DNA of 63,616 nt, filler included, from Octopus bimaculoides (taxonomy: Eukaryota), in the NCBI RefSeq assembly GCF_001194135.2. It is 6 parts of 6 records of this genome, joined end to end, with 100 filler letters (N's around TTAATTAATTAA, not from the genome) between each part and the next. Parts side by side here need not be neighbours in the genome. Positions count along the whole stretch, not along the records: positions 54,875 to 60,645 come from NC_068991.1; 5 more parts are not named here. One strand, written 5' to 3'. Below the pieces are notes generated by a model, which searched no databases, had not been told where the DNA came from, and saw only the letters and a program-made list of their open reading frames with translations. The position numbers and the translations under genes were made by a program. Positions 54,875 through 60,745 of the stretch are shown here, piece by piece; position 1 is the first letter of the stretch; every line of letters starts with the position of its first letter.

Positions 54875-55097
54875 GTCTATGTGATCTCAAATTTTAAAGC
54901 AAACACATAATTTTCTTATGGTTTCTTAAACATTCACTTGAACAAAACTGTACAAATCCAAATATATGGTACCCTAGGCATAACACCTACATGAACTTCT
55001 AACTTGTTGTCTCTTGAGGTCTCTGGGTGAGACTTGGATCCAACTTGTACAAATGCAAAACAAAAGTCAAACATAAAATAATAATAATAATAATAAT
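54875..55097 (+). mobile_element. R4/Dong-type LINE 3' end
   Basis: Identical by eye to window positions 1-207; ends in (AAT)n. Confidence 0.7.
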
Positions 55098-55856
55098 GGT
55101 TTCAAATTTTGGCACAAGGCCAGGAATTTTGGGGGCAAGCAGAAGTAGTAGGGGAGCATTGTAGCCATGTGTTGAAAGGAAATCTTTGGAGTCTGAATAA
55201 TTCACCTCTGGAAAGATATTTCGTTCAACATTCTTAAACAACCCTTATCCAAGGACCTTTTGAGAAGGATGGGTTACTCGACTTGAAGAAAATTCTAGCT
55301 GGGCCCCATTTGCAAGGTCATATGTTGTTTATCTTGATATGAGAACATCTTGTCATGCACATATGGTTGTGATGCGAGTGCTTGGTGTACCCTTGTCAGA
55401 TAGGGAGTCATGATGGGCATACTGGGCTTCGTATATTTTACCCCAGTGTCATTTTGATGGCATGTACTGCTCTCTCACTCAATAATAAGAAGAACAACAA
55501 AAACAACAACAAACAAAAAATAATAATAATAAATTGATTAAATAATAATTGATTTAAACATTAACAAAATCAATTTTTTTAAAACTTATGATTTCAAAAG
55601 TTTTATTGACTATTTTACTTTAGAGAAAGAATACTTTTTAAAATAGTTAGTTTATCACTTACACCACCACCTTCAATACATTATCACCACCACTAGGAGT
55701 GGTGGTGATGGTGGTGGTGAGGATAATGATGATAATGATGGCAATGATGATGATGATGGCAATGATGATGACGATGGCAATGATGATGATGATGGCAATG
55801 ATGATGATGATGATGATGATGATAATAGTCAAGAACAAAAGGTATTAGGTATTTAA

Positions 55857-56055: not shown

Positions 56056-56091
56056 TTAAACAGGAAAATGAGACACTGAGAATACTCTTAC

Positions 56092-56160
56092 TGGTTTTTG
56101 TCTTGGTGATTCCAACTCTGTAACTTCAACGTTTACAATATAGATTACTCCAATTTCATA
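56092..56160 (-). CDS. Exon of the cystatin-fold candidate (YEIGVIYIVNVEVTELESPRQKP)
   Basis: Very strong acceptor ttttttttcttttttacag, donor gtaaga, 69 nt, phase 0-0. Aligns with the cystatin VVAGxxYxLxVEVxET segment. Confidence 0.55.
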
Positions 56161-57379
56161 CTGTAAAAAAGAAAAAAACGTCAGTGTAAAATAAATGTTT
56201 TAATATTTAGAGAACAGTTATAGAATACTCTTGTTCTTCCATTTTCTGACCCATCCTGGGCCTTCTGATATCATTGTTCTTCTCCAGTTTTTCTCTTTGG
56301 TCACCTATGCAAATGTACATTCCCTAATTTACTGAATACTCTCTAAACCAGTCATGGGTAAACTGCAGCCCATGGCACTTTCTGGATTGCCAATGAAAAA
56401 AAAATTACCTGGAATATTTTCAGTAATGCTGCCTGATGATGGGTCATGTCTCATGCAACTTGCCCATGCCTATTCTATACCTTTTTTTACTCCCTTATCC
56501 CCACCTCTCTAATAAACATTTATTACCTTTCTCTCCTTATTGTTCCATTTCCAAATTTACTGTATGAAAGGTACCACCCACCGCCTGTTCATATTGTAAA
56601 GTAGTTGGCTAAAAGAGTACAGAAAGGGTAGATTAATAGGTGCCTCTAGTCCTGTCTTACTGAGGACTGTTCAAGATTTCTAGTGTTGATGCAGAGTACA
56701 CTCTGTAAACTGGTTGACATTAGGAAAGGGATCCAACCATAGAAACTAGGCCTAATGGCAAGTATGAGCACCTAGTCTTTGAAAGCTTTGGCTCCAAATG
56801 GGAGGTGACTCACTGTCCAACCCATGCCAACAGGGAAAGGGGACATAAGATGATAATGATGATGATGACAATGACAACAGCAACAATAATGATGACAATG
56901 ATGATGATGATGACGATGATGACAATGGTCAGAAATGCAGGCATTATCAACAGCACCTGCTACATGCAAAATATATATATATTTTTTAATGTCTGTTGTC
57001 CATGTTGGCAATGCTCAATATATATATTCTTTCAGTTTCCGTCTACCAAATCTGCTCACAAGCTTTTGGTCAGCCAGTGGTTATAGTAGTAGACATTTGC
57101 CTAAGGTTTCTGGTGGTAGGACTGAATCTGAAACCATGTGGTTGGGAAGCAAATTTTTTAACAAAACAGCCAATACCTGTGTGTATATGAAATATTATGC
57201 AACTACAACAGATGACCACTCTATTCTCACTGGCTTAGTTGTGTTGGTGTATATAGCATTAAAACGAAGAACGATCAATTATTTGTTTTTTGCAATAAAT
57301 GCTGTAGCTGGCAGTAGACTTTCAAAGAAAGCGAATGAAGATTTAAAATAATTCTATGTTCAATAAAACGTCCAATACG

Positions 57380-58380
57380 AATGTATTGAATTATGGTGTT
57401 AATGAGGCTGGAACTAATGGTGAAGGCCTTTCACTCAGCAGGTGTCATGTGGTTGGGCAGCACAGGCATGGTTGTCATTCAGAAACTGCTTATACTCAAT
57501 GATAGAAGCAGAGAAAAAGATGGGACAAGGAGGTAAATTGAACAGTAATTGAGTGCTGAATCAGAAGTGAACCCAGTAGAAGGGGATTTGAAAATGCATG
57601 AAATCAAAATGGAATAGGATTCTTTGAGATAAGTGAGCAATAGTTAGTCAATCAGGTAAGTGCAATAAGAACAAATGGGTTAACAGACATGGAAATTGAA
57701 GAAATAAAAAGGCAAATAGAAAACAGAGGTAATACTGCACCAGTAAATAGCATGCCTATTAAGGACAAAGAAATGAACAGTGACTATGAAAATGTAGCGC
57801 AAGATGGAAATGCATTGTCAGAAAATTAAGCAGAAGTAATGGAAAGAACTATACGATGATGATCAACAAGACATTGTGAGGATGATGTGCCAATATATTA
57901 GAGAAGACCAGGATCAAACACTTCCCAATCTAAAAACAGAAATGGAAAAAAACAATACTGTTGTTTGACAATTTCAGATGGAAAATATAACTGAAACCAA
58001 CAAGATTATCAGGGTTGCAGCAAAAAATGAAAACATAAAAATAAGAATATATAGAATATAAAATAAAAAATTTGACATAATATTGGAAGAATTGAAACAA
58101 AAAGCAGTAGTAATCAAGGCAAAATTGGAAAGATATGACAATAGAACAAAACAATTCAGGCAGAACAAATTATATGAATCCGATGAGAGAAAACTGTTTG
58201 AGGAATTAGATGGACAATTACACCTAACATTGGTATCTAATGTAGATGAAAGCAAAGCTTTTTGGTGGTGGTGGGGAATCTGGGATCAACCTGTAGAGCA
58301 TAATGATAATGCAGAGTGACTGCATGCAATCCAAAATAGGTTAAGAAATATACAAGGTCAAGACAGCATAAAAATAAAAA
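57380..58380 (+). mobile_element. R4/Dong LINE N-terminal fragment
   Basis: MEELKQKAVVIKAKLERYDNRTKQFRQNKLYE..., homologous to 5520-6500. Confidence 0.8.
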
Positions 58381-58399
58381 CAGAAATGATAACCACTTA

Positions 58400-58530
58400 C
58401 ACATCCACCTGCACATGCACCTTTGACCACAACACCTACACCACCACCTTCATCGCCACTACCTAACATGAACAAACCCTATGTCACCAGGACAGGCCAC
58501 ACTGTGCATTGGCCCAAAAAACTCACTATT
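58400..58530 (+). mobile_element. Possible Gypsy pol C-terminal remnant
   Basis: KPYVTRTGHTVHWPK resembles the TRSGRxV..P integrase tail. Confidence 0.35.
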
Positions 58531-58879
58531 TATATCTGACAATCTCTTTTGTGTTTCCTGTGACAGACAATTGCTTTCTTGTGTTACTGAACAGTTCCAA
58601 TACTCTGCCGTTGAACATTTTGTCAAATTTTTGTGCATGCCCATTCATATTTCTTGCAATTATTTTTCTATTTGACTTATCACATTTTTGTACCATATCT
58701 TGTTTGTTGCGATCAGTTGCTTTGTCTTAACTCCAAAGGGATGAAAAGCAAAATTGACTTCAGAAGGATTTTAACTCATATTGTAAAGATTTGGAACAAT
58801 AACTGCAAGGCATTTTCCCAAAATTTTTATGAAAAATATATTAGCAACAGAGGAAATATTAATACTGAGAGATAATATT

Positions 58880-59250
58880 TATTCCCATTTAAACATGGAT
58901 CTTCAGTTAGAACAAACTTTACTGTGGTAGATACCACGAGAGAAACTATCATATAGGCTTTTGGCACAAAATATGCTGCTAGTTTTTATCGCAAGTGGGG
59001 AGATAATTTTTCTATATGTCACTGGTAGGGAGATCAGTCATTGCTATCTCTAGCGAGCGAGCATCCATCACTGATGAGACCAAGGGAGGTTGAAATCACA
59101 TGATCTGATGGTCTCGGTGTTGGAGTTTATCTCCCCACTAGCAATATAAGCAAGAGTGCATTTTGCACCAAAAGCTAATATTAGTCTCTCTCATGGTATC
59201 TATCACAGCAATGTTTGTTCAAACAGAACATCCACATTTAAGCAGGAATA
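58880..59250. mobile_element. TIR element (MITE-like) with ~125-bp imperfect inverted repeats and TA ends, carrying the hammerhead
   Basis: Left TATTCCCATTTAAACATGGAT...GTGGGGAGATAA mirrors right TTATCTCCCCAC...ATCCACATTTAAGCAGGAATA. Many mismatches are CpG-decay type. Confidence 0.8.
59058..59116 (+). ncRNA. Type I hammerhead ribozyme (extended form)
   Basis: Stem I CCATCA/TGATGG plus distal CGAG/CTCG; core CTGATGA (59071-59077); stem II GACC/GGTT with AAGGGA loop; GAA; stem III ATC/GAT with ACAT loop; AUC cleavage triplet. Confidence 0.8.
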
Positions 59251-59380
59251 GAAAATTTTGATGATAATGATGAAGATGATTTCTTATATAAACATGAACC
59301 ACCATAGACAGACAGGAAAGGAAACAGGAATTTGTAGTGGTTATATTTTCCCTAAGAGTTCTTAATAAGTAAAAGATTAC

Positions 59381-59602
59381 CTTTTTATAAGCCTTGACAA
59401 TTTTAACCAATCTGCAATCATATTTTTTCAGAGACATATTCAAGAATGGCTTTAGGGATTGTATCTCATGCCGTTTGACACTGATGGAAGGCGCTGGAAT
59501 CTTTTTACTTTTTGGTGTTACATATTTAAAGCAGGTGTACTTTTCCAAGGTGAAATTAGTCTCAGTGTAGATGTTCAGGTAGAATGTACATTCATGACCA
59601 TA
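59381..59602 (-). CDS. Internal exon of a candidate multi-cystatin-fold protein (YGHECTFYLNIYTETNFTLEKYTC...RLVKIVKAYKK)
   Basis: Acceptor ttttttcattgcag, donor AAG|gtaatc, 222 nt, open, phase 0-0. Reads as the end of one cystatin domain followed by the helix and first strand of the next. Confidence 0.6.
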
Positions 59603-60039
59603 CTGCAATGAAAAAATATTAATCTAATGGTCATATAATTACATGGCAGATGAATACAGATACTTCCCAGGGACAGGTTTAGAAGTTATAGTTCTCTAGT
59701 TCAAATCCTAACCTGGTCAGCTAAGTTTTCCACCAGTACTTCTCAAAGTGGGCAGGACCCTCCACTGGCTGGGTAGTTAAAATTTTATTTGGGTATAGGG
59801 ATAAAGTGGGGAGACAGAGGTGTGAGTGATGTACAGTTTTATAAAATTTTAGTCTTTTGTTTCCTATTTAAATATTCTATAAAATCTTTTAAATGCTATA
59901 TTATTATAAACTGCCTGTTATTCACAATCACAACAACAATAACAATAACACAATAACAAAACTTTGAAATATGAATGAGTAAATAAAAAAAAACAAATAT
60001 TTACCACCAGTACATGTAAATTGTAAACAATAAACAAAA

Positions 60040-60620
60040 GTAAAATTTAAAAGGCTGGCTTCGTGCTCTTGTTTGAAGGGGCTAGGATCATTCCAAGTTA
60101 GTGGTCCCAAAGGTGTCATCATGCACAGAGCCAATCAGGCCCACCAGTGCTCTCCATTGCTGGCTATCCTGTGCCAGACCCTTTGCATCCTTCAAGGTGA
60201 TGTTGAACTTCTGAAAATCTTCCTCAGTCATGTCCAGCCATCTGGTGTGGGGCCCACTATGAGGCCTCATCTAGCCTGCAGTTGCTGTATCAAATGAGAG
60301 TAAAGCTCTAATAGGATGATCTAGCAAGAAATGGAGGACATGTCTTTACCAGTGCATGCAACTCATAGCTATGATGTGGGAGGCTGCGGGCTGATGCATG
60401 CACATATGCAGTTCTTTGTTGGAAATGTGATGATACCATCCGATGTTCTTGATAATTCTCAGGGCTCTGTTATCAAAGCTATCGATCCTCTTTGCTAGAG
60501 TCTTCAAGAGGGGCCACATTTCTGCTCCATGGAGGAAAATACAGAGGACTGATGTATTGTAGATGCAGAGCTTTGTCTTCTGGGGGATAGAACAGTGGTG
60601 CCAGAGGAGCTTCCATGGAG
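60040..60620 (-). mobile_element. RTE-like LINE 3' end
   Basis: GPHTRWLDMTEEDFQKFNI...AQDSQQWRALV. Confidence 0.7.
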
Positions 60621-60745
60621 AAGATTTGTGTATATATATATATATNNNNNNNNNNNNNNNNNNNNNNNNNNNNNNNNNNNNNNNNNNNNTTAATTAATTA
60701 ANNNNNNNNNNNNNNNNNNNNNNNNNNNNNNNNNNNNNNNNNNNN

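What the first reader, a model, noticed from the sequence alone, without database searches (positions are those of the whole stretch)
58880..59250. Complete type I hammerhead ribozyme carried inside a long-TIR, MITE-like element
Seen: a 6-bp stem I (59065-70/59106-11), a CAU/U internal bulge and 4 more pairs (CGAG/CTCG); core CUGAUGA; 4-bp stem II GACC/GGUU; GAA; stem III AUC/GAU with a tetraloop; AUC triplet with predicted cleavage after 59105. The only defect is G10.1-U instead of G-C, which is what CpG decay of GGTCGAAA would give. The ribozyme lies in the loop of an element with ~125-bp inverted arms and TA ends. Established: animal hammerheads are known from PLEs, retrozymes, satellites and SINEs such as Schistosoma Sm-alpha, and a stem-I bulge contacting loop II marks the fast extended form. 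Inference: this could be a ribozyme-bearing DNA-transposon family or a rod-like RNA element; I do not know of one described. It lies on the BCAS3 sense strand and ~130 bp from a minus-strand exon donor.
Basis: partly seen in the sequence, partly recalled or inferred. Interest (0 to 1): 0.9.

Follow-up and report, generated by a model that had tools for sequence, protein, structure and literature searches.

The report
Decayed hammerhead ribozyme relic in octopus
An old 371-base hairpin-shaped repeat in an octopus intron carries a complete-looking type I hammerhead ribozyme motif, but it is drifting neutrally and its Octopus vulgaris counterpart has a broken catalytic core, so it is most likely a dead relic of the known ribozyme-bearing retroelements.

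Summary
At 59058-59116 (+) every consensus part of a type I hammerhead is present, with canonical animal geometry: helix I 6 bp plus internal loop plus 4 bp, helix II 4 bp with a 6-nt loop, and a short helix III. It lies between 127/124-nt inverted arms (58880-59006, 59127-59250; 80% matched). Such a motif is expected about 1e-4 times per 60-kb window by chance, but about once per 2.7-Gb genome. Rfam scores it 20.6 bits, below the gathering score of 34.

The piece is Octopus DNA. The same element sits at the orthologous site in O. vulgaris, so it predates that split. There the core reads CAGAUGA (U4 to A). The ribozyme region diverges at the neutral rate (2/59 against 25/371; flanks about 5%).

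Two CpG-type transitions would restore G10.1-C11.1 and a perfectly palindromic helix III, which are hallmarks of canonical animal hammerheads. I therefore read it as a decayed solitary copy of a retrozyme- or Penelope-type hammerhead element, not a working ribozyme. A DNA-transposon (MITE) carrier is neither shown nor excluded. No second family copy could be reached with these tools. Interest is low to moderate.

The parts
58880..59006 (.). Left inverted arm (127 nt)
   Evidence: It matches the reverse complement of 59127-59250 at 79.8% identity over 124 aligned positions. It is present in the O. vulgaris orthologue, where a lineage-specific SINE-like insertion interrupts it.
59007..59057 (+). 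Unique spacer on the left; forms its own small hairpin (GGGAGATC...GCTATCTC)
   Evidence: It appears in the folds. It shows 5/51 substitutions against O. vulgaris. 59019-59034 is a short direct repeat of 58991-59006.
59058..59116 (+). Type I hammerhead motif with extended helix I; predicted cleavage after C17 = 59105
   Evidence: It was read directly from the sequence and found by the descriptor scan. Rfam RF00163 aligns end to end at 20.6 bits, E = 0.005 on 111 nt, below the gathering score of 34.
59071..59077 (+). Catalytic core box CUGAUGA (C3-A9)
   Evidence: In O. vulgaris it reads CAGATGA (T59072 is A there), and the Rfam score drops to 17.1 bits.
59078..59091 (+). Helix II GACC/GGUU (4 bp, G10.1-U11.1 wobble) with 6-nt loop AAGGGA
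   Evidence: It is identical in O. vulgaris, so the U at 11.1 predates the species split.
59092..59105 (+). G12-A13-A14, helix III AUC/GAU with loop ACAU, and C17
   Evidence: AUCACAUGAU is one CpG-type transition from the perfect palindrome AUCACGUGAU. The dimer duplex energy is -3.8 kcal/mol as observed and -12.9 kcal/mol for the palindrome.
59127..59250 (.). Right inverted arm (124 nt)
58871..58879 (.). Candidate target-site duplication, left copy GATAATATT
   Evidence: It matches 59251-59259 GAAAATTTT at 7 of 9 positions. P = 0.003 for one pre-specified pair of 9-mers from this piece. Several lengths were looked at, so this is only suggestive.
59251..59259 (.). Candidate target-site duplication, right copy GAAAATTTT
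59260..59280 (+). Degenerate (GAT)n run directly 3' of the element, on the hammerhead strand
   Evidence: Octopus SINE-like insertions end in (GAT)n, as the O. vulgaris insertion does. This could be a retroposon tail or a microsatellite target. About 1% of positions would lie this close to such a run by chance.
59381..59614 (-). Exon of a predicted gene (O. vulgaris 'hypothetical predicted protein' P0001); donor GT at 59380-59379
   Evidence: tblastn gives 88% identity over residues 69-146. The next exon is at 56074-56172. The element therefore lies in this gene's intron, with the hammerhead antisense to it.

Best explanation
The element is a dead, solitary copy of a hammerhead-bearing non-autonomous retroelement of the animal retrozyme / Penelope-like (PLE) kind.

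How the family would have worked (inferred from the published families):
1. Plus-strand multimeric transcripts cut themselves after C17. The canonical type I hammerhead acted mainly as a dimer through a palindromic helix III.
2. Unit-length RNA was ligated into circles and copied back into DNA by a PLE-type reverse transcriptase.

How this copy looks and what happened to it:
- It inserted into an intron well before the split between the window's Octopus species and O. vulgaris. If the arms were once identical, the insertion is about 3-4 times older than that split.
- The 127-nt arms have two possible origins. They may be the head-to-head inverted 5'-truncated copy that PLE-type insertions often make, with 59007-59250 as the longer, hammerhead-bearing copy. 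Or they may be the two halves of a self-paired retrozyme RNA.
- Since insertion it has decayed neutrally. C11.1 became U, and loop 3 went from ACGU to ACAU; both are CpG transitions shared by the two species. U4 became A in O. vulgaris only.
- The window copy keeps a formally complete motif. It is predicted to cleave weakly or not at all as a monomer, and nothing indicates that the host uses it.

Shown: the motif, the arms, orthology, the neutral rate, and the core mutation in the orthologue. Inferred: the retroelement origin, the ancestral bases, and the dimer/circle mechanism.
For: 1. The motif has the published canonical animal geometry: helix I 6 bp, helix II 4 bp, and a short helix III capped by a small loop (PMC4209133). 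Rfam RF00163 aligns it end to end.
2. It is very unlikely by chance in any given small region: 0 in 544 Mnt of octopus-trained simulation and 0 in 85 Mnt.
3. In a genome with CpG o/e 0.17, two CpG-type transitions restore G10.1-C11.1 and a perfect 10-nt palindromic helix III. Both features are named as hallmarks of genuine animal hammerheads in PMC4209133.
4. The unit is 371 bp, 39% GC and highly self-paired (z = -13). This fits non-LTR retrozymes, whose units are 150-450 bp, below 50% GC, and 350-390 bp in a mussel (PMC7229834). Dispersed monomers, many of them in introns, are reported for vertebrate retrozymes (bioRxiv 10.64898/2026.07.22.740005).
5. PLE-type insertions often carry an adjacent inverted 5'-truncated copy, which forms inverted repeats (PMC8557442).
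6. A degenerate (GAT)n run follows the element on the hammerhead strand, like the tails of octopus SINE-like insertions.
7. It is a relic, not a working part. It is orthologous in O. vulgaris with U4 to A. Substitutions are 2/59 in the ribozyme against 25/371 in the element and about 5% in the flanks (Fisher p = 0.40). No compensatory changes were seen.
Against: - No second copy of the family was found, so neither 'family' nor 'retroelement' is demonstrated.
- There is no tandem repeat at the locus.
- No PLE reverse transcriptase or GIY-YIG ORF was found in the piece or in 49 kb of O. vulgaris; only LINE-type RT fragments and a pogo transposase were found.
- The inverted repeat runs exactly to both ends of the element. 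This fits a TIR transposon or a PLE-type inverted copy, but it would be a coincidence for a randomly opened RNA circle.
- The minus strand folds better than the plus strand (-165.9 against -155.2 kcal/mol). Arm mismatches that would be G-U wobbles favour the minus strand 11 to 6 (p = 0.33), so there is no plus-strand RNA signature.
- The Rfam score is below the family threshold.
- The direction of the U4/A4 difference is unknown without an outgroup.
Confidence: 0.5

Rival explanations
1. Chance motif. The element is an old inverted-repeat element or a local palindrome, and its TGAT/ATCA-rich centre happens to satisfy the hammerhead descriptor. It was never a ribozyme.
For: - About 0.5-3 motifs of this quality are expected per 2.7-Gb genome (analytic estimate; the upper bound is under 5.5e-9 per nt).
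- An Rfam score of 20.6 bits corresponds to tens of chance hits per genome.
- The region is built from repeated TGAT/ATCA words in a genome rich in (GAT)n.
- The hammerhead fold is about 5 kcal/mol worse than a competing fold.
- The orthologue has A at U4 and no constraint is visible.
- No family copy was found.
Against: - The motif is expected only about 1e-4 times per 60-kb window and no more than about 4e-6 times per 371-nt element.
- The order-5 model that captures GAT richness raised the relaxed-motif rate only about two-fold.
- The exact canonical 6 bp / 4 bp / 6-nt-loop geometry, the extra internal loop plus 4-bp closing stem, and the two 'one CpG transition away' features are not required by the descriptor and would all be added coincidences.
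Confidence: 0.22
2. The element is a MITE-like non-autonomous DNA transposon with about 125-bp terminal inverted repeats, and its internal region carries a genuine hammerhead.
For: - The inverted repeat reaches exactly to both ends.
- Arm differences look like neutral decay of two once-identical DNA copies, including three CA/TG pairs typical of decayed CpG, with no RNA strand bias.
- An imperfect 9-bp flanking direct repeat (7/9, P = 0.003) would fit superfamilies that make 8-10-bp duplications and have long TIRs.
- No paper in the searched library links hammerheads to DNA transposons, so it would be new.
Against: - All known eukaryotic hammerhead carriers are retroelements, satellites or SINE-like elements (PMC7229834, PMC4209133).
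- PLE-type insertions produce the same arm-spacer-arm shape (PMC8557442).
- No transposase partner, no second copy and no empty site were found; O. vulgaris has the element too.
- The 'TA' ends are part of the repeat, not a demonstrated duplication.
- A 9-bp duplication also fits target-primed retro-insertion.
Confidence: 0.13
3. A currently functional ribozyme in the window's species, for example one that processes an intronic or antisense transcript, kept intact by selection.
For: The window copy keeps all 11 core nucleotides and all 13 helix pairs, although the arms imply about 10% decay per copy. Only 1 substitution falls in 59065-59111 between the species.
Against: - The low substitution count is not significant (binomial P = 0.11; Fisher p = 0.40).
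- The one change in the orthologue hits an invariant core base.
- G10.1-U11.1 and a 3-bp helix III argue for poor monomer activity.
- The motif is antisense to the only annotated gene at the locus.
- It scores below the Rfam threshold.
Confidence: 0.05

Closest known systems
Animal non-LTR retrozymes (Cervera and de la Pena 2020, PMC7229834; Li et al. 2026 preprint 10.64898/2026.07.22.740005)
   Same: They carry a type I hammerhead with 6-bp helix I, 4-bp helix II and a short helix III. The unit is a few hundred bp (mussel 350-390 bp; here 371 bp), GC is below 50% (here 39%), and the predicted RNA is highly self-paired. Dispersed monomers occur, often in introns.
   Different: No tandem copy lies here and no second copy was found. 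The inverted repeat ends exactly at the element's ends. The hammerhead sits at the tip of the hairpin, intact in the middle of the copy. 11.1 is U. There is no plus-strand structural bias.
Penelope-like elements: hammerheads in pseudo-LTRs, and insertions with an adjacent inverted 5'-truncated copy (PMC4209133, PMC8557442)
   Same: The hammerhead lies in a non-coding terminal region, in only one of two inverted partial copies. The arm-spacer-arm layout matches, and so do a microsatellite-like flank and the frequent solitary, truncated remnants.
   Different: Most animal PLE hammerheads are 'minimal' forms with almost no helix III, whereas this one is the canonical form. No RT or GIY-YIG ORF lies nearby.
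Schistosoma Sm-alpha SINE-like element and newt/salamander satellite 2 hammerheads (established knowledge; Rfam RF00163)
   Same: They are short non-coding repeats that carry a canonical type I hammerhead, with helix III weak as a monomer and palindromic for dimer action.
   Different: Those families are abundant and their motifs pass Rfam's threshold. Here there is one decayed copy at 20.6 bits, and no tRNA-like head was found.
MITEs / long-TIR non-autonomous DNA transposons
   Same: Sharp terminal inverted repeats of about 125 bp, small size, AT-rich sequence, and a possible short flanking duplication.
   Different: No MITE is known to carry a self-cleaving ribozyme. Family, transposase partner and a clean target duplication are all undemonstrated.

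Membership tests
Hammerhead ribozyme, type I (Rfam RF00163) | Invariant core C3 U4 G5 A6 N7 G8 A9, G12 A13 A14, the A15.1-U16.1 pair, and H17 before the cleavage site | tested here: met
   CTGATGA is at 59071-77, GAA at 59092-94, the A59095-T59104 pair is present, and C17 is 59105. The O. vulgaris orthologue does not meet this: it has U4 to A.
Hammerhead ribozyme, type I (Rfam RF00163) | Three helices around the core, with helix I open (5' and 3' ends) | tested here: met
   Helix I has 6 bp plus 4 bp beyond an internal loop, helix II has 4 bp, and helix III has 3 bp with a tetraloop.
Hammerhead ribozyme, type I (Rfam RF00163) | Highly conserved G10.1-C11.1 pair | tested here: not met
   G59078 pairs with T59091 as a G-U wobble, and the same is true in O. 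vulgaris. A CpG transition could have produced it, but that is inference.
Hammerhead ribozyme, type I (Rfam RF00163) | Score at or above the curated gathering threshold (34 bits) | tested here: not met
   The window copy scores 20.6 bits and the orthologue 17.1 bits. The match was not reported in the scan of the whole piece.
Hammerhead ribozyme, type I (Rfam RF00163) | Conservation or covariation of the helices in relatives | tested here: inconclusive
   Only one relative, the orthologue, could be reached. There is 1 change in 59065-59111 and it lies in the core. The distal stem CGAG becomes CAAG. No compensatory change was seen, and the rate does not differ from neutral.
Hammerhead ribozyme, type I (Rfam RF00163) | Self-cleavage after position 17 | not testable with these tools
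   This needs in vitro transcription or mapping of RNA ends.
Animal non-LTR retrozyme | Unit of about 150-450 bp, GC below 50%, highly self-paired RNA, carrying a type I hammerhead | tested here: met
   The element is 371 bp and 39% GC, with MFE -155 kcal/mol and z = -13. The minus strand folds at least as well.
Animal non-LTR retrozyme | Head-to-tail tandem copies (at least a dimer), so that two cleavages release a unit | tested here: not met
   There is no second copy in the piece or in the 49 kb of O. vulgaris sequence around the orthologue. Monomer derivatives are known in the literature, so this excludes an active array, not descent from one.
Animal non-LTR retrozyme | Multi-copy family in the genome; circular RNA expression | not testable with these tools
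   No octopus genome or RNA collection is searchable by DNA. The attempts found nothing usable.
Penelope-like element insertion | RT plus GIY-YIG ORF, or sequence identity of the unit to a PLE pseudo-LTR | tested here: not met
   No such ORF was found in the piece or in L001/L002. Identity to an octopus PLE terminal repeat could not be tested.
Penelope-like element insertion | Inverted 5'-truncated copy abutting the longer copy, with the hammerhead in the non-coding terminal region | tested here: inconclusive
   The layout fits: 58880-59006 would be the inverted short copy and 59007-59250 the longer copy with the hammerhead. A TIR transposon gives the same picture from a single locus.
MITE / TIR DNA transposon | Terminal inverted repeats reaching the element's ends | tested here: met
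   The arms are 127 and 124 nt, 79.8% identical, and start at the first and last base.
MITE / TIR DNA transposon | Target-site duplication of fixed length | tested here: inconclusive
   No TA duplication lies outside the repeat. The imperfect 9-mer GATAATATT/GAAAATTTT matches at 7/9 (P = 0.003 for a single test).
MITE / TIR DNA transposon | Empty site in a relative; a multi-copy family; an autonomous partner with the same termini | tested here: not met
   O. vulgaris carries the element at the same site, so no empty site is available. Copies and a partner could not be searched. The pogo transposase 18 kb away in L001 shows no match to the element in the whole-locus comparison of the element against L001.

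The most novel reading that the evidence does not exclude
The element is one copy of an octopus DNA-transposon (MITE) family with about 125-bp terminal inverted repeats and a 9-bp target duplication, and its internal region carries a genuine canonical hammerhead. That would be the first link between a self-cleaving ribozyme and a class II element.
Probability: 0.12. Interest if true: 0.6.

Novelty: new member of a known kind. Interest (0 to 1): 0.25.

Why it matters
If the retroelement reading is right, this adds cephalopods to the animals that carry canonical type I hammerhead elements. I found no paper in the searched library reporting one. It also gives a dated example of how such a ribozyme decays in a heavily CpG-depleted genome: the C11.1-G12 step of every hammerhead is itself a CpG. 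That is useful for annotation and for calibrating motif searches, but it is not surprising, because animal genomes often hold thousands of such motifs. Only the unproven MITE reading would change how ribozyme carriers are viewed.

Tried and rejected
1. An Rfam scan of the whole piece at E up to 10 listed no hammerhead. The match appears only on a 111-nt scan. 67 kb of O. vulgaris sequence has no Rfam hit at gathering scores.
2. Exact-pattern scans for the hammerhead and for an arm block found 0 hits in metagenome contigs and 0 in prokaryotic genomes.
3. I looked for family copies through translated ORFs of the element.
   - The word-indexed protein search found none.
   - The exhaustive HMMER search gave one hit, P0002. 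It is a low-complexity tandem-repeat protein that matches 19 residues nine times, so I rejected it as spurious.
4. I tried to sample more octopus genome through transposon proteins.
   - The pogo transposase look-up returned only the same locus.
   - The LINE RT search returned no NCBI octopus proteins.
   - L003 (an unknown eukaryote) and L004 (a 1-kb Logan contig with the same LINE family) contain no copy of the element.
5. I looked for a plus-strand RNA signature in the arms. The minus strand folds better, and wobble-type mismatches favour the minus strand 11 to 6. I rejected this as evidence for a selected plus-strand rod.
6. Tandem repeats of the unit: none. A tRNA-like SINE head: none.
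7. The 244-nt unit 59007-59250 is only mildly structured on its own (z = -1.8), so it is not obviously a self-contained rod.
8. A (GAT)n-rich background as the cause of the motif: the order-5 Markov model raised relaxed-motif rates only about two-fold and still gave 0 full motifs in 544 Mnt.
9. Pfam on the exon and on LINE-like ORFs of the piece gave no informative hit.

Full report
**What is there**

| Part | Sequence and coordinates |
|---|---|
| Distal pairs of helix I | CGAG 59058-61 / CTCG 59113-16 |
| Internal loop | CAU 59062-64 / U 59112 |
| Helix I | CCAUCA 59065-70 / UGAUGG 59106-11 |
| Core | CUGAUGA 59071-77 |
| Helix II | GACC 59078-81 / GGUU 59088-91, loop AAGGGA |
| G12-A14 | GAA 59092-94 |
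| Helix III | AUC 59095-97 / GAU 59102-04, loop ACAU |
| Cleavage-site base | C17 at 59105 |

The topology is type I, because helix I is the open one. A descriptor scan that I wrote finds this motif and nothing else in the piece or in 46 kb of orthologous octopus DNA.

Rfam's Hammerhead_1 model aligns it end to end, but at 20.6 bits against a gathering score of 34. The match showed up only when 111 nt were scanned, not in the scan of the whole piece.

The inverted arms are 58880-59006 and 59127-59250. They match at 99 of 124 aligned positions, with 3 gap columns, and the repeat starts at the very first and last base. The 371-nt element folds with z = -13.

**Is it more than chance?**

- Order-1 Markov sequence (85 Mnt) gave 0 motifs at least as good (helix I at least 6, II at least 4, III at least 3, at most one G-U, loops 3-20).
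- Order-5 Markov sequence (544 Mnt), trained on octopus DNA with the element masked, also gave 0.
- The region is built from TGAT/ATCA words in a genome full of (GAT)n. The order-5 model, which captures this, raised the rate of very relaxed motifs only about two-fold.
- An analytic estimate from base composition gives about 1e-10 per nucleotide.

The motif is therefore improbable for this window (about 1e-4) and for this element (no more than about 4e-6). About one such motif per 2.7-Gb genome is still expected by chance. The Rfam score alone would occur tens of times per genome.

The hammerhead fold is not the preferred fold of the segment: -11.7 against -16.4 kcal/mol, with GAGACC 59077-82 able to pair with GGUCUC 59110-15. 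That is common for hammerheads and does not decide anything.

**Where it comes from**

An ORF next to the element (59222-59608, minus strand) matches one protein, a 'hypothetical predicted protein' of Octopus vulgaris, at 89% identity.

Its locus is OX597824.1:47.69-47.74 Mb, fetched as L001. It is collinear with the whole piece at 83-94% identity. The window therefore comes from another Octopus species. The composition fits: 36% GC and CpG o/e 0.17.

The protein's exons lie on the window's minus strand at 59381-59614 and 56074-56172, and the GT donor is 131 nt from the element. The element is thus intronic, and the hammerhead is antisense to the only gene annotated there. No gene on the hammerhead's strand is listed for the 46-kb locus.

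**The orthologue**

The element sits at the same site in O. vulgaris (L001 18777-19312). A lineage-specific SINE-like insertion with a (GAT)n tail interrupts its left arm. The element therefore predates the species split.

- Within 59062-59116 the only difference is T59072 to A. This turns the invariant core CUGAUGA into CAGAUGA, and Rfam drops to 17.1 bits.
- The distal stem CGAG reads CAAG.
- Both species share U at 11.1 and the ACAU loop.

| Region | Substitutions between the species |
|---|---|
| Hammerhead 59058-59116 | 2/59 |
| Whole element | 25/371 |
| Flanks | about 5% |

Fisher's test gives p = 0.40 and the binomial test P = 0.11. There is no detectable constraint, and I found no compensatory change in the arms.

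The arms differ at 20% of sites, against 5-7% between the species. If the arms were once identical, the insertion is about 3-4 times older than the split.

**Reading the decay**

The C11.1-G12 step of any hammerhead is a CpG, so GGTCGAAA becoming GGTTGAAA is the expected first casualty in this genome.

Loop 3 ACAT is likewise one CpG transition from ACGT. That change would make helix III plus its loop the perfect palindrome AUCACGUGAU. The duplex of two copies is -12.9 kcal/mol for the palindrome and -3.8 kcal/mol as observed.

Cervera and de la Pena (PMC4209133) define canonical animal hammerheads by a 6-bp helix I, a 4-bp helix II and a short helix III with a small palindromic loop that lets two copies act as a dimer. 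They name the G10.1-C11.1 pair and this palindromy as marks of genuine motifs.

The observed copy has the geometry exactly and is two CpG transitions from the rest. This is inference, but my descriptor did not ask for it. It moves me toward a real hammerhead ancestry rather than chance.

**What carried it**

Known carriers fit well. Animal non-LTR retrozymes are 150-450-bp, low-GC, highly self-paired units with type I hammerheads, 350-390 bp in a mussel (PMC7229834). Dispersed monomers, many of them in introns, are described for vertebrates, and the family is tied to the terminal repeats of Penelope-like elements (bioRxiv 10.64898/2026.07.22.740005).

Penelope-like insertions often have an inverted 5'-truncated copy abutting the main copy (PMC8557442). 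That would give exactly this picture:
- a short inverted copy at 58880-59006;
- a longer copy at 59007-59250 that alone contains the hammerhead;
- a repeat that reaches both outer ends.

A degenerate (GAT)n run follows the element on the hammerhead's strand, like the tails of octopus SINE-like insertions.

Against a simple 'RNA rod' origin:
- the repeat ends exactly at the element's ends;
- the minus strand folds better (-165.9 against -155.2 kcal/mol);
- wobble-type arm mismatches favour the minus strand 11 to 6.

The same facts fit a TIR DNA transposon. The flanks carry an imperfect 9-bp direct repeat (7/9, P = 0.003 for one test), not a TA duplication. One locus cannot separate these carriers.

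**What I could not do**

No octopus genome can be searched by DNA with these tools.

- Pattern scans of the available collections were empty.
- ORF-based routes to other copies failed.
- The extra loci I could fetch hold no copy.

**Verdict**

Rod-like hammerhead elements are already described, the DNA-transposon idea is unsupported, and this copy is an ancient, neutrally drifting relic whose orthologue has lost the core.

| Reading | Probability |
|---|---|
| Relic of a retrozyme/PLE-type element | about 0.5 |
| Chance motif | about 0.2 |
| MITE carrying a real hammerhead | about 0.12 |
| Ribozyme still under selection | about 0.05 |

Noticed in passing
L001 19141-19288 (O. vulgaris), at the site of window 58900: There is a lineage-specific insertion of about 150 bp in the left arm. 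It is a SINE-like sequence ending in (GAT)7, flanked by a duplicated GATCTT, and it is absent from the window's species. It shows that (GAT)n-tailed retroposons were active after the species split.
   Followed up: partly
window 59381-59614 and 56074-56172 (minus strand): These are two exons of a predicted gene that matches O. vulgaris 'hypothetical predicted protein' P0001 (198 aa, no Pfam domain) at 88% and 70% identity. It is not clear that this is a real protein-coding gene. The second exon diverges after about 25 residues.
   Followed up: partly
window 55706-55826, 56849-56929, 59260-59280: All GAT-rich microsatellite runs in the piece are in the same (plus) orientation, and there are none as ATC. 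This suggests same-strand retroposon tails or a strand bias in this intron.
   Followed up: no
window 60050-60640 (minus strand): This is the 3' part of a LINE ORF2-like sequence, broken by frameshifts and stops (ORFs of 45-60 aa with typical LINE C-terminal motifs). It has no Pfam hit and is conserved in place in O. vulgaris.
   Followed up: partly
window 57600-58330 (plus strand): These are lysine/glutamate-rich ORF fragments, for example 58083-58319 with ...LERYDNRTKQFRQNKLYESDERKLFEEL.... They look like part of a LINE. From memory the motif resembles the endonuclease-RT junction region; I did not test this.
   Followed up: no
window 58392-58718 versus L001 19477-21850: The two species do not align here. 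There are 326 bp in the window and about 2.4 kb in O. vulgaris, so there has been a large insertion or deletion just upstream of the element.
   Followed up: no
window 58991-59006 and 59019-59034: This is a short internal direct repeat (AAGTGGGGAGATAA against CTGGTAGGGAGATCA). As a result, the inner end of the right arm can pair with either copy.
   Followed up: no
L001 37475-38968: An intact 497-aa pogo/Tc5-type transposase gene (HTH_Tnp_Tc5, DDE_1) lies 18 kb from the element in O. vulgaris. It is a single place in the collection, and the comparison of the element against L001 found no match there.
   Followed up: partly
window 55073-55135 and several places in L001: An abundant octopus SINE-like repeat (…TTTGGCACAAGGCCAGGAATTTTGGGGG…) is present in at least five copies within 46 kb of O. 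vulgaris.
   Followed up: no
L004 (Logan SRR11869391 contig, 1066 bp): It is 75% identical over 808 bp to the LINE RT fragment at L001 29530-30324. Cephalopod-like reads therefore exist in the Logan assemblies, but they can be reached only through called ORFs.
   Followed up: no
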